NCBI GenBank assembly: GCA_964247055.1
Contig: OZ176051.1
Coordinates: forward strand, 10,354,001 to 10,418,000
Direction: 5' to 3'
DNA from: Paragordius varius
Lineage: Eukaryota; Animalia; Nematomorpha
Length of the DNA stretch: 64,000 nucleotides
The translations under genes and the position numbers were made by a program. How positions within the stretch are numbered: position 1 is the stretch's first letter; each line of letters starts with the position of its first letter. Positions 175 to 10,853 of the stretch are shown in pieces. Under the pieces are notes generated by a model. It searched no databases. It was given only the letters and a program-made list of their open reading frames with translations, and was not told the DNA's origin.

Positions 175-951
175 CCATTTCTCTATCAAAAAAACGTTTT
201 CCCAATTAAAAACATTTTCCCAATCAATAAAAACATTTTTCCAGTCAATAAAAACGGTTTTATTTTTGATGATAAATACCGAAACAAGCTATAAAAATAA
301 TAAGTTTTAACCATTAAGAGAACACTAATAAGGAGATTATATTTTATAAATTCACATGAATGACAATATTTTAATATATGCAATTATACACATTAATGAC
401 TTCTTAAAAGATATATTTAATTAATTGTGTGATATGTTATGATTTGACATATTTTTATACAATTTTTTACAAAGGTAACACTTCTAACGCAACATTTTTC
501 ATTCAAACGAAATTAAAAATATTGCGTTTGTTTAGAAAAATGTTGCTTCAGACTGAAAAATGGTATAAAAATATGTCAAAACCATAAAATACTCATCAAT
601 AAAATATAGCTTTCAATAAGAAGTCACCAATGATTATATATTTGATGACATAAAAAAATGTCATTCAATATTGATTTTATAAAAAATATATCCTTATCAA
701 TGTTCTCTTAGTGGTTACTTATTTTTATACCTTGTGTTGATATTTATCATCGAGAATAAAACCGTTATTGACTTGGAAAATGTTTTTATTGATTGGGGAA
801 ATCGTTTCGATTGACTGAATAATTGTTTTTATTGATTGGGAAAATGTTTTTCTTCGCTGGTAACATGTTTCGATTGAATGAGAAAACGTTTCAATTAATT
901 GGAAAAATGTTACGATTGATTGAGAAAATGTTTTTATTGACTGGGTAATGG
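175..951. repeat. Foldback/MITE-like long imperfect inverted repeat with internal ~20-nt TTTTATTGATTGGGAAAATG-type subrepeats
   Basis: Arms ~175-500 and ~535-951 are reverse complements. Ends are TA|CCATT...AATGG|TA. Confidence 0.7.
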
Positions 952-1350
952 TAAATAAAATTTTACAACAATAATTGGGAATTTTTGTAAATCACCTGCA
1001 AATTAAGTATTTAATGTTTTTCTAATTGGTAAGAACTTGTATGAATATGTAATCATATTGCCCTTAACCCCTTATTATACCTTGTTTTGATTTCTTGTTT
1101 TTGATATTTATCATAAAAATGAAACCGTTTTTATTGATTTGGAAAATGTTTTATTGATTGGGAAAATGTTTTGATTGGGGAATTGGAAAAATGTTACGAT
1201 TGACTGAAAAAATGTTTTTATTGACTGAGTAATGGTAAATAAAATTTTACAACAATAATTGGTAAAATTTGTAAAATCACATGCAAATTAAGGATTTAAT
1301 GTTTTTTTATTGGTAAAAACTTTGTGTAAAAATTTATTCTTATTACCCTT
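720..1350. repeat. Degenerate direct tandem duplication of the right foldback arm plus its flank
   Basis: ~720-1070 is repeated at ~1075-1350, e.g. TAATGGTAAATAAAATTTT...CAACAATAATTGG...GCAAATTAAG occurs twice. Confidence 0.65.
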
Positions 1351-2124
1351 AAACATTTGGTATCAAAGTTTATAAATTTTAATGCATTATATATATTATA
1401 AACGCCTTTGCCTTTATTTATGAAATATTAGTTCTGGAAATACTAGAACCGCTTTAAATATTAAGGAAAGTAATTATTTTTCCTGCGATTTCTTATGTTT
1501 TTACGATTACAACAGTAAAAGTGGGTAGAGGCGAAAAACACTCGTTATTTAATAACCTAATTTTCAATAAAAAATAATATCGAGTATTACTGTTAAGTCC
1601 AATATATCGAAATCTTTTTTTATATATCAAGTAGTAGTTTATTGAGAGTGAGTCAGTCTATCATACCCTTGTTCTGAATCAAAAGTCACTAATTAAAGGA
1701 TTATATATCTACTAAACCTTTAAAAAAGATGTTATTTAAAAAATGGCGCATTAATGATTTGAGCCAATTTTTGATTTACATAAATTAATTAATATGTGCC
1801 GAATTCGAATTGAAAACAGTATTTCTTGATACTTAATAAAAAGTTTTGCAACTAAAGCATAATGTATTTTATTTGAATCCAAAAAAAATCGTGCAAGTCC
1901 CCTTCATACCGTATTTAATAACTTTAAAAACTCATTTTTATGAGTTTGGAACCGTATCCATACAGTTTATTTTTTAAAACGGATCAAAAATTTGATAACA
2001 TTGGTTTTAATTTCATTCATTTCCTTTAATCTCGGTCAAGGGTTAATCAAATACTCCAAAAAAAGTTTAGAAGGATTTAGTTTGTTGCCAATTATTCATG
2101 AAAAAAAAATACATATCTCGTTAC

Positions 2125-2540
2125 TTTAAGATTCGCGCACCATGTTAAGCAAGGATGGTATGTTTCTTGCAATGCCTTCTTCAAATTGTGCCCAAAGTAA
2201 AATATAACTATCACGTTTCCCCACCGATCTATGGACATGAGTAGGTTGGACAGTTCAGTTATGTAATATTTGGTCCAAATACCCGAATACGGGTTTATAA
2301 TCTGAAATATTTCCAGGAAATTTATTATGGTGGTAGGGGCACCTACGATCAAATGTAGCATCATAATCGATATAATCATATGAATGGCTTTACTATTATG
2401 TTCTACGGATGAGGTAGCACCCAAAACTTTGGCTGATTGCTTGGACGCTTTTTGTAAGGCCGTGATTGAAGCCACATATGCTATTACAGCTATAACCACT
2501 GGTATAAGCAAACCTAAAAGAGCAAAAAGTTTGTTAAACA
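2125..2540 (-). CDS. Rhodopsin-like (class A) GPCR, exon 2 (TM5-TM7). May instead run to the stop at 2092.
   Basis: TTTTAG acceptor at 2541, phase matching exon 1 (G|TG = Val). TM5 LLIPVVIAVIAY, TM6 LHLIVGAP, TM7 SNLLMSIDRWGNVIVIFY. Confidence 0.8.
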
Positions 2541-2819
2541 CTAAAAATTATGATATGTTGCTTATTTATATTATCAATTTTACAATATTATTTTCTGGTT
2601 TTGATCCGACCCCGGTACAGGTTAAACGTTAGGTTCCGCTTATTTTTAATATGAGGGTTAACCGATATACATATCTGAAAACAAACGATAATTTATAATC
2701 ATTTATTTTATACTAAAATCGAATATCATTCATTTATAGTTGATAAACTTAACCTAATAAACTGCCTAATTATGCAATATATATTTAAATTTAATACGTT
2801 TTTTTAAATGTTTAAACCA

Positions 2820-3086
2820 TGTAAGGTTGATTTATTCACGTATAGCAGTATGGTATAATAAAATAGAGTTGAGAGATAAAAAGAAAAACCAAATAAAAAA
2901 GTGAGTTGCTATTATATCACAAGTTCTTTTTATGTGTGCATGCCTTATTTGCGTAGACGTTACACAATGGTTATTCTCAACAACAGATAAGCTTTAACAC
3001 GAAATATATATATAATATTCAAATACAAAATAACTGATGCAACATGAATTGAGTGTGTTAACAAAATAGAATATTATAACCTTACA
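2820..3086 (-). repeat. 3' LTR (267 bp)
   Basis: TG...CA ends with a 9-bp terminal inverted repeat. Reads identical to 9286-9552. Confidence 0.97.
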
Positions 3087-3089
3087 TTA

Positions 3090-3099
3090 CTCTCCCCCT
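3090..3099 (-). other. Polypurine tract AGGGGGAGAG
   Basis: Lies 3 nt upstream of the 3' LTR on the minus strand. Confidence 0.9.
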
Positions 3100-3151
3100 A
3101 AGTTAACCACGGGGGCTGTCGTGTTCGTACATTATACCTATAAGTTTAAAC

Positions 3152-5335
3152 CAGTGATACTCAAACCGCGGCCCGCGGGCCGCATGCGGCCCTAAGAGTG
3201 CTTTAAAATTGCCCTATGACCATATTGATACTTGAATCATTTTTTTATTGATGAATTTTTAAAATAAACATAAATGAATTTTTGCTTATTTTAATATCAA
3301 TTTGTTTTCTTTAGATTTTATTTTGGTAATATTTATTTTTTACCCAATTTGAAAGGTAAAAAATTTCCCTACATTAAAATGATTTCAAAATTTAAGCCTA
3401 CGTTGTTTCTGTTTCTGTATTCTATCTTTTCTTATTTTTATTGCCCTCGTTTTTTGTATTTAAGCAAGCCTTCCAACTTATACATATTCTTTTCATTGCT
3501 ATCCTGCATCATTTTTTATCACTCATTCCCATAAAATATTTTTCAAATTAACATCATCAAATTTCGACCTGTTTTTTAGCATAATTCAAATTAAACTCCT
3601 ATTTAAAAAATTACATAATATTTAAACATAAATTCAAAGGATGACATCTAATGCTAAAAAAAGGTAAATTATCCGATGAAAATCGTTCCTTTAATGGGAA
3701 GACAAATTATTTGTCGTTTTACCTGCCTAAATATAATATTGAAAGACATTTTACAATCCATCATTTTCATAAATTACTAGAAAATCATGAGGAAAGAAAC
3801 GAAAAATATAAAAAGATTAAGGAATTATACCAGAAAAAAATTTATTATGTCTATAGCTTTCTCCCAGGAAAAAGCTGTAACATTAGCATCGTATGAAATT
3901 TGATATATTTTAGAAAAAAATATGAATCCGTTTACTGATTCCCAACTAAAGATTGTCTAATAAATGATTGCACTTTTTTAGATAAATTTTATAAAGAAAT
4001 CATGAGGCAAATTAGAAAAAATTTACCTTTCTAATTCAATAAATGCTCGACGCATTGAAGATTTATCTAAATGTATATTTAACAAAAGCTCTGAAAAACT
4101 GCAAATATTCTGGTATTGCTATTGATTCTAGCACTATTAGTTCAACCACTTAATCTGCGCTCTTCGTGAGATATTCCAAAGACAACATAATCTACGAGGA
4201 ATATTCAGAAATTTTACCAATAAATAATAGCAGAAAAACTTAATTTCGCGTGTAAAAGATGAATCACTCAATTCAGTAATTAAAACGGTTGTGCATATAG
4301 TTAATCACATCCGTGGCAGAGAATTCAACCGCCGTAAATTTAAAAACCTTCTGAAAGATATCCACAGTGAGTTTGAAGATGCCAAGCCTTAGCAAAGTAT
4401 TAAATAGATTTTTGGTTTAAGACAAGAAATTCTATTATTTATAAAAGATAACAGATAGTTTGACGAGGAAATTAATAGTGACCAATGGTGGGTTTTTATT
4501 AGCCTATCATTACTTATAAACTAATATTTTTTAGGAAAAATTAATAATGTATAAACAAGATTTTATAAATAAAACACTCCTAATTTTCCAACACTTAAAA
4601 CGATTCATGAAAAAAATATGGAAATTACCGCGGAGATTAATTTAATAATAGTCAATTATAAAATTTTTGTCTAATGAGATGTTCTAATTTCAAGAATTAA
4701 GAAATATTAAAAATTGCAAAAAACTCGTTGAATATCCATGGCATATGGATATATCTAATATTAAGCAACTTGAGCATTTCGGTTTTGATCAGGTGCACGC
4801 ATATCATTGAAGAGTTCGTACATGTTAAAAATGATTCCACTTTAGAGGCTATGTTCAAGGAGAATCGTAGAGAAGAAAGATATGTGGAATTTTGGAAAGA
4901 TGTGCCAAATAAATATGAAAATTTAAAAAAATGTGGTCAAGTTATCCTATTTTCCCTCAACTTACACGTGTAAGACGACATATTCAAAAATGAAGTATGT
5001 CAAGAATACATACAGAAATGCCTTAACCGATCATATGGACGACGTATTAAGATTGGTCTGTCATGAGGCGAAACCAAATTTGTCCAAAATTATTTGTTAA
5101 TATCAAAATAAATGTTGTTCTCAAAATATTTTAATTTTTTATACTAAATGGTGCAAAACGAGTTTTTAGCTGGATTTGCATGCGATCCGCCAAAAATTCA
5201 TTTTACTAATTTAAAGTATAAATGTGTGCATATAGCTCAAATAGCTATGATATATTTGCCATTATAAGGTTCTTGGCCCTCGAAAAAAAATTATATTTTA
5301 TTTGGCCCGTCAAATTTTTTTGGTGAGTACCACTG
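3152..5335 (+). mobile_element. hAT (Buster/Charlie-type) DNA transposon nested in the gypsy element
   Basis: TIRs CAGTGATACTCA / CAGTGGTACTCA (11 of 12 match). Perfect 8-bp TSD GTTTAAAC at 3144-3151 and 5336-5343. Subterminal GCGGCCCGCGGGCCGCATGCGGCCC motif typical of Buster/Charlie elements. Confidence 0.95.
3640..5070 (+). pseudogene. Decayed hAT/Buster (GTF2IRD2-like) transposase
   Basis: Fragments in mixed frames: KLSDENRSF..KYNIERHF, IAIDSST, VIKTVVHIVNHIRGREFNRRKFKNLL, and the hATC motif STYTCKTTYSKMKYVKNTYRNALTD. Many stops, frameshifts and deletions. Confidence 0.85.
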
Positions 5336-8300
5336 GTTTAAACGATCGGGAGGCTGCCGTCTTCTTAGCGGATATCTACGCTCGGGTAGGTCAGAAACCT
5401 CCTTTACCACGTCGGGTGTGGCCTCTACAGGCGTCAGCGATTCTGGGGCTACGTTTTGCCATGAGGTAGCAGGCGTTGGGGCATGGACTATTTGAGATTC
5501 CGAGGTGGGATGGAAGGTGTGTTCGGAGTGGGCCTCGACATGACCCGGGACACTTTCGACGCTGGGATATTTATGCTCTATTAAGGGATTAGTTTCGTAT
5601 GAATTCCCTCCTGACCTACGTCGTAACTGATCTGCATGTTTACGTTTTCGAATCCCTTCCTCATCTTGCACTTCATACGAGAGTAACCCCCTTCTCTCCA
5701 GAATGTGACCTGGCCGCCAGCCTACGGCCATTTCATTTTTAATATAGACAGGATCGTCTTGTTGGAATTCGCGTCTCGGTTCATTTTCGTGCTCTATAAA
5801 TTCGACAGGGGTTGTTTTTACCCAAGAGATAGGATTGTGTACACGCCGTTTTAGGAATATGGCGGAAGGCGTTTCTTTTAGCGAAGAATGCATGCTAGTT
5901 CGATACGAATAAAGGACCGTGTTGATAGCTTCATATGCATGCATTTGTTGGGTCTTAGTAGCGGCGTATTTCGTTTTTAATGTCTTTATTACTCTCTCTA
6001 CTAGACCGTTTGTTTTGGGATGATAGGGTGCTGCACAGATGTGCTTTATATTCATATGATTCAGGAGAGTCGTAAATTCTCTTGAAGTAAAATACGTGGC
6101 GTTATCGGTCACAATTTGGCGGGGAAAACCAAATCGTGCGATGTGTTTCTCCAGGCAATTTAAAACGCTTTGACTCGTTATTGATTTAAGAAGATCTATC
6201 TCTACCCACCGTGAGGCGCTATCGATAGTCACTAACCAATAATATCCGTCCACCGGTCCAGCAACATCTATATGTAACCTTTCCCATGTCAAAGTGTTAA
6301 AATTCCATCGATAGGGAAGATTTTCAGGTGCGTTAGGTCGATAGGTTTGGCAAGCCTCGCACCTTTCCACATAATTCTCTAGATCGGTGTCTAATTCGGG
6401 CCAAAATACCGAACACCGGGCTTGGGCTTTCATTGTTTTTAGCCCGCTGTGTCCCGTATGCAGAAGTTTCAATATCGTTTCCTGCATCGCTTGTGGTATC
6501 ACTAAGCGATCATTCAGGTATAACAGATTATAACAATCCAAGTCATTTTTATGTTTTAAAAAAGGTTTCAGATCTTCGTCGATCCAACTGTTTGTCCTGA
6601 GAGCATTTTTAACTTTTGATAACCGTTGGTCAGTGATCGTTGCCTCTTCGACCACTTTCTTATTTACATCAAGTGTTTTTAGAGCCAAAAATCGTACCTG
6701 CTTGGTCGCCGCGTCATCTTCATCATCTGGTTGGCTATGCTCTATGGGAAGTCTCGACAACGCGTCGGCTAAGTTTTCTTCCCCTTTCTTGTAAAATATT
6801 TCATACTCGTACCCGATGGTCTTCGATATCCACCTGAGCAGTTTGCTATTATTAATGTTGTTGATATCTCTCTTCCGCCCAAATAGTGACACCAGCGGTT
6901 TATGATCTGTATATATCTCGAAAGGTCTTCCATATATAAAGTATTTAAATTTTTCTAGGGCAAACACTATGGCCTTGGCCTCTTTTTCGATCGTGGAATA
7001 ACCCTTTTCTGCTATTGAACAAGTTCGTGACGCGTAAAAAATTGGGCGTTTCTCCTGTGGGGTCTTATGAAACAGTATTGCCCCAAACCCCTTGTTGGAA
7101 GCATCTGTTTCGATCAACAATGGAAAACGGTCGTTAAATGGCATTAAAGCGGGGGGCCTGGTTAGCAAGCTTTTTGCTTTCGCGAATTCACTATCATCTG
7201 CCGGGGTCCACCGCCAAGGTGTATTCTTTCCACTTAACTTGTGTAGGGTTGCTAGGTGTGGGTGACAGTTTGGTATAAACCGCTCATGAAAATTTATTAA
7301 GCCTAAGAACGAACGTAGCTCAGTTTTGTTTGTAGGTGTCGGACAATTTTTAATGGCCTCTAATTTTTCATTGGACGGCTCAATACCTTGGTCAGAAATC
7401 ACGTACCCCATGTATTTGACTCGTGAGATACCAATTTGCAATTTGTCTCGGCGCAATCGTAATCCCGCCTCTTGTAACCTTCTAAATACTTCCCTTAATC
7501 TTTGATCATGTTCCTCCCTGGTAGCTCCGGAAATTAAGACATCATCCAGGTACACACAAATACCAGGTATGTCCTTTAAAAGATTGTCCATGCATCTTTG
7601 AAAGATCATAGGTGCTGAAGTTAATCCGAATGGAAGTCGCTGGTAAGCATAAAACCCTTTGTGAGTTGTGATGGTCACTAGCGTCTGTGACGCCCGGTCT
7701 ATCGGAAATTGTAAGTAAGCATCTTTCAGGTCTAAAGTGGAAAAAATTATCCCATTTGCCACTTTGGTGGCCAACTCGTCAAAAGTAGGTATCAGATGAG
7801 AATCTTTTGCTAAATAACGGTTGATACTAATTCGGAAATCGGCACAAATCCTAATTTCTCCATTTACTTTAACTATATTTACTGTGGGAGAGGCCCATGT
7901 TATTGGGGTTTGGGTCGGATCGATAGGTCGGAGTATTTTGAGTTTAACTAATCTATCAATTTCATTTTCTACTAAAGGTTTTAGAGTTAAAGGTACCCTA
8001 CGACAAGGAAAAACTTTAGGTTTGGCCCCGGGGTCGATAAATAATTTTATTGGGGGCCCCTTGAAAGTACCTAACTCGTCTGAAAACAATTTGTCAAAAT
8101 AATCAAATAACATTTTATTATTAGGTGCTTGCGTATGTAAAACTGAAAAAACATTTTTTGGTAATTCTAACCGAAACGCCCGCATCCAATTCATCCCGAA
8201 CACGGCTGGCGGGTTAGTTTGCGTCACCACGCAGGGCAGGCACTTCTCCTCTTCGTTCAAAACCACTGAAATCATCGATTTTCCGAGTACTTCTATCGGG

Positions 8301-9265
8301 CCATCATTGTAGGTTCGCAAATTTGGAGCTGGGAGCAAACGAGGTCGACCAATATTTACCCAAGTGCGCTTGCCAATAACGGATACCTCGGCGCCCGTAT
8401 CGTAGATAAACGTTGTTGGTATATTATTTATTAATACCTGAATCCGGGGGGTGTTGTTCGGGCTAGTCATGGTGCGGATTGACGGCCGTCGGAACGTTGC
8501 CTTGCATACTGTGCTGAAATGATTCCATTTGTCGCAATTGAAACACCGTTTTCCTTTTGCCGGACAGGTGGCGGAACCATGTCGATACCCACAATTACTA
8601 CATAGCTTTCGGATTATTTGATTGATTGTATTATTATCATTAACAACTGGTTGGATACTTGAAGAAAGTTCACTGGTATTATTATTGTTCATATCATTAT
8701 TATCTCTGATGTTGTGAACCTTTTTATCTTCTAATTCATAGGAATAAGCGATGTCTACAATCGCTTGAAGGGTTACCGGACCCCCGTCCTTTTTGCCATC
8801 TGGATATTTGGATTGAATTTCGCGTTCTACTCTGGGATTTTCAAGACCTACCAGGAATAAATCGCGTAATTTTGACTGAATATCCCCTTCAAATTTCCCG
8901 GCTTCACACTTTGCTTTCAGACGTTCCAGGAAATCCATGACTGATTCATCTGGCATTTTTTTTAATCGGTAGAATTCAACTCGATTTAACCATAGGCTGC
9001 TGATTGGTGAATATATCTGAGTGGCCAAGGTTGCAATTTCCTCCCATTCCATGTCATCTATGAGTTTTGGAAATGCTAACGTTTCAATTTTCATTATTAC
9101 TTGAATACCGCCGAAAGCGAGAAAAGTGCGTTTCATTGTGGTGTCATTGGATTCGATATTTTTGGAATTTAAGACTCTCCTGATGTGACGTATATATTGC
9201 GTAAAATTCATCGGTTCCTTAAAAGGCTCCAAAATCAGTTTTGAAATGTCCAACGCTTGGCTCAT
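5291..9265 (-). CDS. Gag-Pol polyprotein, 1324 aa (gag, two Zn knuckles, protease, RT, RNase H, integrase)
   Basis: CSNCGYRH..C and CFNCDKWNHFSTVC knuckles, DTG protease, YLDD RT, TDAS RNase H, HHCC zinc finger and D-D-E integrase (HIDVAGP, TDNA, VERVI). The last 14 aa derive from the hAT TIR. Confidence 0.97.
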   Translation of the reverse strand: MSQALDISKLILEPFKEPMNFTQYIRHIRRVLNSKNIESNDTTMKRTFLAFGGIQVIMKIETLAFPKLIDDMEWEEIATLATQIYSPISSLWLNRVEFYRLKKMPDESVMDFLERLKAKCEAGKFEGDIQSKLRDLFLVGLENPRVEREIQSKYPDGKKDGGPVTLQAIVDIAYSYELEDKKVHNIRDNNDMNNNNTSELSSSIQPVVNDNNTINQIIRKLCSNCGYRHGSATCPAKGKRCFNCDKWNHFSTVCKATFRRPSIRTMTSPNNTPRIQVLINNIPTTFIYDTGAEVSVIGKRTWVNIGRPRLLPAPNLRTYNDGPIEVLGKSMISVVLNEEEKCLPCVVTQTNPPAVFGMNWMRAFRLELPKNVFSVLHTQAPNNKMLFDYFDKLFSDELGTFKGPPIKLFIDPGAKPKVFPCRRVPLTLKPLVENEIDRLVKLKILRPIDPTQTPITWASPTVNIVKVNGEIRICADFRISINRYLAKDSHLIPTFDELATKVANGIIFSTLDLKDAYLQFPIDRASQTLVTITTHKGFYAYQRLPFGLTSAPMIFQRCMDNLLKDIPGICVYLDDVLISGATREEHDQRLREVFRRLQEAGLRLRRDKLQIGISRVKYMGYVISDQGIEPSNEKLEAIKNCPTPTNKTELRSFLGLINFHERFIPNCHPHLATLHKLSGKNTPWRWTPADDSEFAKAKSLLTRPPALMPFNDRFPLLIETDASNKGFGAILFHKTPQEKRPIFYASRTCSIAEKGYSTIEKEAKAIVFALEKFKYFIYGRPFEIYTDHKPLVSLFGRKRDINNINNSKLLRWISKTIGYEYEIFYKKGEENLADALSRLPIEHSQPDDEDDAATKQVRFLALKTLDVNKKVVEEATITDQRLSKVKNALRTNSWIDEDLKPFLKHKNDLDCYNLLYLNDRLVIPQAMQETILKLLHTGHSGLKTMKAQARCSVFWPELDTDLENYVERCEACQTYRPNAPENLPYRWNFNTLTWERLHIDVAGPVDGYYWLVTIDSASRWVEIDLLKSITSQSVLNCLEKHIARFGFPRQIVTDNATYFTSREFTTLLNHMNIKHICAAPYHPKTNGLVERVIKTLKTKYAATKTQQMHAYEAINTVLYSYRTSMHSSLKETPSAIFLKRRVHNPISWVKTTPVEFIEHENEPRREFQQDDPVYIKNEMAVGWRPGHILERRGLLSYEVQDEEGIRKRKHADQLRRRSGGNSYETNPLIEHKYPSVESVPGHVEAHSEHTFHPTSESQIVHAPTPATSWQNVAPESLTPVEATPDVVKEVSDLPERRYPLRRRQPPDRLNQWYSPKKFDGPNKI

Positions 9266-9273
9266 TGAAAGAA

Positions 9274-9283
9274 CACGGCACCA
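9274..9283 (-). other. Primer-binding site TGGTGCCGTG (complementary to the tRNA-His 3' end)
   Basis: Lies 2 nt after the 5' LTR. Complement of CACGGCA-CCA, the conserved 3' end of eukaryotic tRNA-His(GUG). Confidence 0.8.
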
Positions 9284-9285
9284 AA

Positions 9286-9552
9286 TGTAAGGTTGATTTA
9301 TTCACGTATAGCAGTATGGTATAATAAAATAGAGTTGAGAGATAAAAAGAAAAACCAAATAAAAAAGTGAGTTGCTATTATATCACAAGTTCTTTTTATG
9401 TGTGCATGCCTTATTTGCGTAGACGTTACACAATGGTTATTCTCAACAACAGATAAGCTTTAACACGAAATATATATATAATATTCAAATACAAAATAAC
9501 TGATGCAACATGAATTGAGTGTGTTAACAAAATAGAATATTATAACCTTACA
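9286..9552 (-). repeat. 5' LTR (267 bp)
   Basis: Direct repeat of 2820-3086, followed by the TSD AACCA. Confidence 0.97.
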
Positions 9553-9934
9553 AACCATATCAGGGATATAGCAGGCATATATTATGGTCTTATTTATATC
9601 GCGTGATTTTTTTGACGTACAAATTAGTAGCTTTCCTGTTCAAAATTATTATTTGACAAAATAAACAAATCCACAGAATTGCATGTTAAATTATGAGAAA
9701 TGGCTGTATGCGTGACTAGTTGTATATTAAACAATTTTCGATTATAACTATAAATTCAAAAATAAATAAGAATACTAACGCTCCTAACCGGATTAATTTT
9801 ATCGATGGGGTGAATGCATTAAAATTTGGTGAACTTGAAAACACAAATCCTATTAAATTTTATGGGATAAGTATCATTTCTGTAAGTTTAAAAAGCATTT
9901 TTTTATATTTAAATTGGTATTTTCTAAAACATAC

Positions 9935-10853
9935 CAAACAAAGTGGTATAGATAAGAATTATAGTGTTCCATTCATGGCCCATGAATTTTTCATGTAAGG
10001 AACAATGCGTTTTAACCATAATTATGATTAATGGAATGGTCGATAGCACAGTCAAAGAAAATAGGAGTATAATTTTTTCATAAGTTCGCCAAAATTGGGA
10101 TTTGTCTAACCAAAGCGTTTGATAACACCCTTTTTGAGACTTTCTCACCATCTTGATGATTGTTTTGATTGGGTGTTTACGAAATGAGAAAGTGAATTTC
10201 GTATTACTATTTATGCCACTTACAGCTCTGTACCGGTTAAGTGCTAAGGCAGTTATGGCATATGCACTGGCAAATCCACAGTATCCGCTAAAAAATGTGA
10301 AAAAAGTTTGAACCCTACAGGTGTAAGCAATTTCTCCCGTGTGACTCTTTGCCGCAAAAAATATGGTGGGATAATTGAAGATGACGTATAAGGGTAGACA
10401 AATGGCCCCTACCAAAAAATCAGCGCTACTCAGAAAAACTATATACATATTCATATTTCTAACATCCTTTGACAATGTTCGGCGTACTGGAATAGGCGGG
10501 GATGGTGTAAAAATGCGTGAACGAGGCGAATCACTCTGACTGACCAAAGATGTAGGACTCAGGGTGGTAAAAGAAGTTGTCATAGATCTCAAGGAGTCAT
10601 CAGCTAGCAGTTTAGGATCATTGTGCCTACGATACAATACCTTGAGCAAGATAACATGGATTAGGATGAAATTACTGATAATGATTGCCGCAATATTTAT
10701 CATATAAAGTAGGATCCATACGATAGAAACTGTAGAATGGTCATTTGTTAGATATGTACTTATTGTAGGATTTTCACTAAAATTTAAATATGGAGAATGA
10801 TTTAATATAGGAGGAAAGGATGCGAGTGTAAAATTGGTTGACATTGTAGCCAC
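9935..10853 (-). CDS. Rhodopsin-like (class A) GPCR, exon 1 (N-terminus to start of TM5)
   Basis: N-glycosylation sequons in the N-terminus, TM1 IIISN, TM2 LSSADFL, TM3 Cys...ALALNRY, TM4 with P. GTATGT donor at 9934, phase 1 (919 nt). Confidence 0.85.

What the first reader, a model, noticed from the sequence alone, without database searches (positions are those of the whole stretch)
3144..5343. A dead hAT transposon sits 6 nt before the end of an intact gag-pol ORF: possible retro-carried DNA-transposon cargo
Seen: removing 3152-5335 plus one GTTTAAAC restores the ending ...RRRQPPDRLNL* (TAG at 3140-3138), 38 nt from the PPT. The insertion deletes only the last Leu and adds QWYSPKKFDGPNKI from the hAT TIR, so the polyprotein stays open. 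The ages conflict: LTRs are identical and the ORF is pristine, yet the nested transposase is heavily decayed and its TIRs mismatch. Inference: either the composite has been copied by reverse transcription, which re-homogenises LTRs and would spread a Class II passenger via a Class I route, or an old defective hAT was recently trans-mobilised into almost the only tolerated site.
Basis: partly seen in the sequence, partly recalled or inferred. Interest (0 to 1): 0.75.

Follow-up and report, generated by a model that had tools for sequence, protein, structure and literature searches.

The report
Old dead hAT hopped into young gypsy
A broken cut-and-paste jumping gene (hAT) sits inside the tail of a very young copy-and-paste jumping gene (gypsy); the other 24 gypsy copies examined at that site lack it, so this is an ordinary recent nested insertion and not a DNA transposon being spread by reverse transcription.

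Summary
Window 3152-5335 (+) is a 2184-bp dead hAT element with an 8-bp target-site duplication, GTTTAAAC. It sits 6 nt before the native stop codon of the gag-pol ORF of a Ty3/gypsy element on the minus strand. That gypsy has identical 267-bp LTRs and a 5-bp duplication, TGGTT.

The "retro-carried cargo" reading fails its own test. All 24 other gypsy copies in this genome whose site could be read have an uninterrupted site with a single GTTTAAAC. This hAT variant, with its private 61-bp deletion, occurs nowhere else in the assembly.

The age conflict is only apparent:
- At least 11 of the disabling indels, including a 190-bp deletion, are shared with three other copies (94-96% identical), so the element was already dead when it moved.
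- The single TIR mismatch is shared by 25 of the 27 copies examined, including those with an intact ORF, so it is not decay.
- A related young autonomous family (median 98% identity) keeps a stop-free 609-aa transposase at two loci and has identical termini.
- hAT moves by cut-and-paste, so an old copy can relocate and leave no twin behind.

The cargo route also would not explain the young gypsy interior, which is 99.5% identical to its closest relative.

Best reading: recent trans-mobilisation of an old non-autonomous Buster-type hAT. The "only tolerated site" idea has no support. The finding is ordinary and of low interest.

The parts
2815..2819 (-). gypsy target-site duplication TGGTT, 3' side
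   Evidence: other copies have their own 5-bp duplications (ATTAC, TTGAA, ATTGG)
2820..3086 (-). gypsy 3' LTR (267 bp, TG...CA)
   Evidence: 100% identical to 9286-9552
3090..3099 (-). polypurine tract AGGGGGAGAG
   Evidence: read from the sequence; conserved in 4 other full copies
3138..3143 (-). displaced native end of gag-pol (Leu codon + TAG)
   Evidence: paralogs end ...DRLNL*
3144..3151 (.). hAT target-site duplication GTTTAAAC, left copy
   Evidence: single copy in 24 empty paralogous sites
3152..5335 (+). dead non-autonomous Buster-type hAT element, antisense to the gypsy. TIRs at 3152-3163 and 5324-5335. Remnant transposase start at about 3641.
4524..4525 (+). junction of a 61-bp deletion private to this copy, found nowhere else in the genome
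4228..4229 (+). junction of a 190-bp deletion shared with the three sister copies
5336..5343 (.). hAT target-site duplication GTTTAAAC, right copy
5291..9265 (-). gag-pol ORF as it now stands (1324 aa; the last 14 codons and the stop are read from the hAT end)
9268..9283 (-). putative primer-binding site TGGTGCCGTG..., 2 nt after the 5' LTR
   Evidence: read from the sequence; conserved in other copies; the tRNA was not identified
9286..9552 (-). gypsy 5' LTR
9553..9557 (-). gypsy target-site duplication TGGTT, 5' side

Best explanation
This is a simple two-step nesting.

Step 1: a member of a young, multi-copy Ty3/gypsy family integrated here, making the 5-bp duplication TGGTT.

Step 2: shortly afterwards, an old and already dead non-autonomous hAT of the Buster group was mobilised in trans. 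The likely source of transposase is a related autonomous hAT family in the same genome. The element inserted by cut-and-paste at a TA-centred 8-bp target, GTTTAAAC, that happens to lie 6 nt before the gypsy stop codon.

hAT transposition empties the donor site. The element's divergence from its relatives therefore dates its last replicative split, not its arrival here, so there is no real conflict of ages. The gypsy ORF stays open because the copy is young and the insertion fell by chance in its last codons, not because of selection.

Shown: the insertion, the empty paralogous sites, the inherited lesions, the shared termini, and the intact transposase genes elsewhere.
Inferred: which transposase acted, and that the donor site was emptied rather than being missing from the assembly.
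For: Empty sites:
- 24 of 24 other gypsy copies have an uninterrupted site with one GTTTAAAC.

The hAT was dead before it moved:
- Three full sister copies, L002-L004, are 94-96% identical in substitutions and have their own 8-bp duplications at unrelated sites.
- They share at least 11 indels with the window copy, including frameshifts and a 190-bp deletion, so the transposase died before these copies separated.

Termini fit trans-mobilisation:
- The first 41 nt are identical to the autonomous copy L017, and the last 84 nt (positions 2101-2184) are 96% identical. The interior is about 88% identical.
- The same imperfect TIRs occur in 25 of the 27 copies examined.

A source of transposase exists:
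- The autonomous family has a median pairwise identity of 98.2% and some terminal branches of 0.001-0.004.
- Stop-free 609-aa ORFs lie at C2:1488663 and C4:7017656.
- The protein has a hAT dimerisation domain above the Pfam cut-off and full-length relatives at 53-55% identity in arthropods.

Target site:
- All 24 duplications read nnnTAnnn, the Buster consensus (PMC3517528).

Age comparison:
- The hAT copy has 27 private columns in 2151, plus a private 61-bp deletion.
- The gypsy has 3 private columns in about 1400 and 0 LTR differences in 267.
- The rate difference gives P = 4e-4. The chance of identical LTRs, had the hAT's private changes arisen in place, is about 1e-3.
Against: - No donor site or excision footprint was identified.
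- No near-identical free copy exists, so movement is inferred rather than seen.
- The old subfamily has only four full copies and one fragment, so there is little independent sign that it is still mobile.
- Transposase activity is inferred from open frames only.
- One haploid assembly without reads cannot show whether the insertion is polymorphic.
- The genome searches score only the best candidates, so copy counts are lower bounds.
Confidence: 0.85

Rival explanations
1. Retro-carried cargo. The hAT entered a parent gypsy copy elsewhere. The composite RNA was then reverse-transcribed and integrated here, and the parent composite was later lost or is missing from the assembly.
For: - The LTRs are identical and the composite is flanked by an intact 5-bp duplication.
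- The polyprotein, PBS, PPT and both LTRs are all retained around the insert.
Against: - 0 of 24 other copies carry the insert.
- Retrotransposition keeps the parent, yet the best other hAT match is 88-90% by BLAST. The private 61-bp deletion junction is unique in the genome.
- The gypsy interior is itself young. A recent hop of an old hAT is therefore needed anyway, and the cargo step explains nothing extra.
- The insert is antisense and 28% GC, and it adds 7 AATAAA motifs on the gypsy sense strand. By inference only, this would work against full-length RNA.
Confidence: 0.05
2. Old nesting masked by gene conversion. The hAT entered an old gypsy copy long ago, and the gypsy arms and LTRs were later homogenised by conversion from younger copies.
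For: More than 20 highly similar gypsy copies are available as conversion donors.
Against: - It needs separate conversion tracts on each side that stop exactly at the hAT, without erasing it.
- Both 8-bp duplications and both gypsy 5-bp duplications are perfect.
- The window gypsy clusters normally with its nearest relatives, with no mosaic signal in the 1.4-kb segment examined.
Confidence: 0.03
3. Assembly artefact that joins an hAT read into a gypsy copy.
For: Both are multi-copy repeats, which are prone to mis-assembly. No reads were available.
Against: - The insert has complete TIRs and a perfect 8-bp duplication of exactly the sequence that is single in 24 paralogs.
- It also fits the family's nnnTAnnn target rule.
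- A chimeric join would not create these features.
Confidence: 0.02

Closest known systems
Non-autonomous hAT elements mobilised in trans (Ac/Ds of maize; hAT MITEs such as Mar of Drosophila, PMC3517528)
   Same: - A defective element keeps the family termini and relies on a transposase encoded elsewhere.
- 8-bp duplication.
- Cut-and-paste movement, so copy divergence does not date the insertion.
   Different: - This is a 2.2-kb decayed full-length derivative, not a short deletion derivative or MITE.
- It is about 12% diverged from the autonomous family.
- Mobilisation was not shown experimentally.
Buster family of hAT transposons (TcBuster, Charlie, and the GTF2IRD2-type domesticated relatives)
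   Same: - nnnTAnnn duplications in 24 of 24 copies.
- The transposase's best named relatives are GTF2IRD2-like proteins.
- hAT dimerisation domain, with weak DUF4371 and SPIN-DOC-type zinc-finger matches.
   Different: - No phylogeny with reference Buster and Ac transposases was built.
- Catalytic residues were not checked.
Nested TE insertions used for relative dating (a younger TE inside an older one)
   Same: A Class II element sits inside a Class I element, with both sets of target duplications intact.
   Different: The nested element looks older in sequence than its host. This illustrates that divergence-based ages fail for cut-and-paste elements.
Ty3/gypsy LTR retrotransposons (Metaviridae)
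   Same: - TG...CA LTRs, 5-bp duplication, PBS and PPT.
- A single gag-pol ORF with the domain order PR-RT-RH-INT.
   Different: - Very compact, about 4.5 kb without the insert.
- No gag, env or chromodomain profile hit.
- The clade was not assigned.

Membership tests
hAT superfamily | 8-bp target-site duplication | tested here: met
   GTTTAAAC on both sides, and single in 24 empty paralogous sites. 22 of the 24 duplications read are perfect 8-bp repeats and two differ at one or two bases.
hAT superfamily | short terminal inverted repeats | tested here: met
   12-nt TIRs, CAGTGATACTCA and CAGTGGTACTCA, with one mismatch shared by 25 of the 27 copies examined
hAT superfamily | transposase with the hAT C-terminal dimerisation domain | tested here: met
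   Met in the intact relative L017: PF05699 at 31.9 bits against a cut-off of 21.4. The window copy holds only a decayed remnant of the same gene.
Buster family of hAT | target duplication consensus nnnTAnnn | tested here: met
   24 of 24 duplications have TA at positions 4-5. The consensus is taken from PMC3517528.
Buster family of hAT | transposase groups with Buster/Charlie rather than Ac in a phylogeny | tested here: inconclusive
   The best named relatives are GTF2IRD2-like and ZBED5-like proteins. No tree with reference sequences was built.
Ty3/gypsy LTR retrotransposon | LTRs with TG...CA ends, a short target duplication, PBS and PPT | tested here: met
Ty3/gypsy LTR retrotransposon | pol domain order PR-RT-RNase H-integrase | tested here: met
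   Pfam: protease-like 275-362 (weak), RVT_1 468-623, RNase H 686-814, integrase 923-1122
Retro-carried DNA-transposon cargo (composite replicated by reverse transcription) | two or more composites with the same internal junction at different genomic sites | tested here: not met
   0 of 24 other gypsy copies carry it. This hAT variant is unique in the 110-Mb assembly.
Retro-carried DNA-transposon cargo (composite replicated by reverse transcription) | full-length composite RNA | not testable with these tools
   no transcript data available

The most novel reading that the evidence does not exclude
The composite is still competent for retrotransposition, since its ORF, PBS, PPT and LTRs are all retained. 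On this reading it either arrived here as a unit or will spread as one, giving a natural case of a Class II element propagated by a Class I route. Further composites would then be present in other individuals or in unassembled sequence.
Probability: 0.04. Interest if true: 0.6.

Novelty: new member of a known kind. Interest (0 to 1): 0.14.

Why it matters
The main value is as a clean worked example. A dead cut-and-paste element can look much older than the retrotransposon it sits in, because its divergence records its last replicative split and not its last move. TE age estimates based on divergence should not be applied to DNA transposons without this caution.

The locus also shows that this very AT-rich animal genome has a recently active gypsy family. 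More than 20 copies are 97-99.5% identical, and several have open polyproteins of about 1310 aa. It also has a probably still active Buster-type hAT family, with two stop-free transposase genes.

It does not show any new route of transposon spread.

Tried and rejected
- Search for a second composite. I read the hAT/gypsy junction in every retrievable gypsy 3' end, and all 24 were empty.
- Search for a near-identical free hAT or a donor remnant. The whole-element search and two junction-specific searches found only three full sisters at 94-96% substitution identity.
- The partial copy L005 (94% by BLAST) was tested as a possible donor remnant left by abortive gap repair. It lacks the window copy's private deletions and has a different 5' end, so I rejected it.
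- Gypsy target preference for GTTTAAAC. A third GTTTAAAC lies 2 nt from the LTR end, which suggested a preference. Other copies' flanks show no such motif, so I take it as chance.
- Search of solved structures with the transposase: no sequence match.
- Literature searches for retrotransposon-borne DNA transposons and for dating of cut-and-paste copies returned only general TE surveys.
- Earlier notes of this scan gave nothing near this place.
- The two arms of the gypsy were always compared separately.
Full report
**What is there**

The region holds a Ty3/gypsy LTR retrotransposon on the minus strand.
- Its LTRs, 2820-3086 and 9286-9552, are 100% identical over 267 bp.
- On the element's strand they read TGTAAGG...CCTTACA. 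They are flanked by a 5-bp target duplication, TGGTT, at 9557-9553 and 2819-2815.
- Two nucleotides after the 5' LTR comes a TGG-initiated putative primer-binding site. The ATG is at 9265.
- The 1324-aa ORF (9265..5291) carries a protease-like domain, RT, RNase H and integrase in the gypsy order.
- A polypurine tract, AGGGGGAGAG (3099-3090), lies 3 nt before the 3' LTR.

Inside the end of this ORF, at 3152-5335 on the plus strand (antisense to the gypsy), lies a 2184-bp hAT element.
- Its 12-nt terminal inverted repeats are CAGTGATACTCA and CAGTGGTACTCA.
- It has a perfect 8-bp duplication, GTTTAAAC, at 3144-3151 and 5336-5343.
- The ORF now reads ...RRRQPPDRLN, then QWYSPKKFDGPNKI* from the hAT end.
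- The displaced Leu-TAG sits at 3143-3138, 38 nt from the polypurine tract.

**Is the insertion real?**

The window's genome is 110 Mb in 44 contigs. It holds at least 19 full-length and several partial copies of this gypsy at 97-100% identity.
- I read the site in all 24 other copies whose 3' end could be fetched. Every one has a single GTTTAAAC (one copy reads GATTAAAC), followed directly by GATCGGGAGGCTGCC....
- Full copies on C4 and C6 have ORFs of 1312 and 1306 aa ending ...RRRQPPDRLNL*.
- The copies have different flanks and different 5-bp duplications, such as ATTAC, TTGAA and ATTGG. Most are therefore independent integrations.

This gives 24 paralogous empty sites. The hAT insertion with its duplication is a true event private to this copy.

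**The hAT and its relatives**

A DNA search with the insert finds two groups.

The first group is a young family of about 2450-bp elements.
- Twenty-three copies were aligned, and the genome has hundreds more candidate fragments.
- Median pairwise identity is 98.2%.
- Two loci, C2:1488663-1490489 and C4:7017656-7019482, encode a stop-free 609-aa protein. Three more loci have a single stop.
- The protein has the hAT C-terminal dimerisation domain above the Pfam cut-off, plus weak DUF4371 and SPIN-DOC zinc-finger matches.
- Its full-length relatives, at 53-55% identity, are arthropod proteins named GTF2IRD2-like. These are the Charlie/Buster kind of hAT.
- All 24 target duplications read have TA at positions 4-5. 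This is the Buster consensus nnnTAnnn (PMC3517528), and GTTTAAAC fits it.

The second group is an old dead subfamily of four full copies plus one 5' fragment, L005.
- The full copies are the window copy and L002-L004, on C8, C4 and C6.
- They are 94-96% identical to each other in substitutions, or 88-90% when gaps are counted.
- They are about 12% diverged from the autonomous family.

**Why the ages only seem to conflict**

1. The decay was mostly inherited. Of the 24 indels that separate the window copy from the intact ORF, at least 11 are shared by all four dead copies. These include deletions of 7, 16, 28, 8 and 190 bp. The 190-bp junction occurs only in these four copies. The transposase was therefore dead before these copies parted, and they spread as a non-autonomous element.

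2. The TIR mismatch is not wear. The same A/G difference at position 6 is present in 25 of the 27 copies examined, including those with an intact ORF.

3. The parts needed in cis are kept. The first 41 nt are identical to the autonomous copy L017, and the last 84 nt (positions 2101-2184) are 96% identical. The interior is about 88% identical.

4. The window copy does carry private changes. It has 27 private substitution columns in 2151, a tree terminal branch of 0.023, and several private indels. One is a 61-bp deletion whose junction is unique in the genome.
   - The host gypsy has only 3 private columns in about 1400 bp, a terminal branch of 0.0036, 17 mismatches in 4217 bp to its closest relative, and no LTR difference.
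   - The rate difference is significant (P = 4e-4). Had the hAT's private changes arisen in place, identical LTRs would be expected with a probability of about 1e-3 or less.
   - So the hAT lineage is older than its stay here. For a cut-and-paste element this is no paradox. Divergence from relatives dates the last replicative split, and a hop empties the donor site, so no twin need exist.

**Cargo hypothesis**

Retrotransposition is copy-and-paste, so a parent composite should remain. There is none. No other gypsy copy carries the insert, and no other hAT copy exceeds 96% identity to this one.

The cargo route also would not explain the data. Reverse transcription resets the LTRs, but it does not reset the divergence of the gypsy interior from its relatives, and that divergence is very low. 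A recent hop of an old hAT into a young gypsy is therefore needed under either reading, and the retro step adds nothing.

By inference only, the insert would also hinder a full-length transcript. It is antisense, 28% GC against 42% for the gypsy interior, and adds 7 AATAAA motifs on the gypsy sense strand.

The idea that this is 'almost the only tolerated site' has no support. An integrated TE copy is under no selection to stay open, and this is a single event at a site that fits the family's TA-centred target rule.

**Other rivals**

- Conversion-masked old nesting would need conversion tracts ending exactly at the hAT on both sides.
- An assembly chimera would not create a perfect duplication of a sequence that is single in 24 paralogs.
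- Both are given a few per cent.

**Verdict**

This is an ordinary recent nested insertion, useful as an illustration of a dating pitfall. It also indicates that both TE families have been active recently in this genome.

**Limits**

- There is one assembly and no reads or RNA data.
- Genome searches score only the best candidates.
- Transposase activity is inferred from open frames.
- The Buster assignment rests on the target consensus and on named relatives, not on a tree.
- The two gypsy arms were compared separately.

Noticed in passing
window 9927-10853 (-) and 2095-2541 (-): Two minus-strand ORFs match complementary parts of the rhodopsin-family GPCR profile 7tm_1: profile positions 17-87 at 26.8 bits and 157-229 at 27.3 bits. 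Each is just below the 30.5-bit cut-off. The 6.7-kb gypsy+hAT composite therefore probably lies, in sense orientation, in an intron of a GPCR gene that would otherwise be under 1 kb.
   Followed up: partly
G000 C4 about 6.99-7.16 Mb (loci L039-L042, L008, L010, L011): Four gypsy copies share identical flanks. Three autonomous hAT copies share the same duplication, ATCTATAT, and recur at a spacing of about 46-47 kb. This looks like a tandem segmental duplication that carries both TEs. Only one of the three hAT copies keeps the open 609-aa frame.
   Followed up: partly
window 2810-2817: A third GTTTAAAC lies 2 nt from the gypsy LTR end, out of only four in the 64-kb window. Flanks of other gypsy copies show no such motif, so I take it as coincidence.
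   Followed up: yes
window 180-1300: Degenerate repeated units resembling TTGATTGGGAAAATGTTTT. They include a 95-nt pair at 897-991 and 1181-1275 that is 94% identical. Possibly a small satellite or MITE cluster.
   Followed up: no
L005 (G000:C4:7584543-7585577): A truncated 5' half of the dead hAT subfamily with an altered terminus: the GC-rich palindrome after CAGTGATA is deleted. It does not share the window copy's private lesions.
   Followed up: yes
L037 (G000:C1:10630009-10631305): This gypsy copy matches the query over only about 990 bp of its interior and has a very long branch (0.19) in the 1.4-kb interior tree. It may be truncated or interrupted by other sequence.
   Followed up: no
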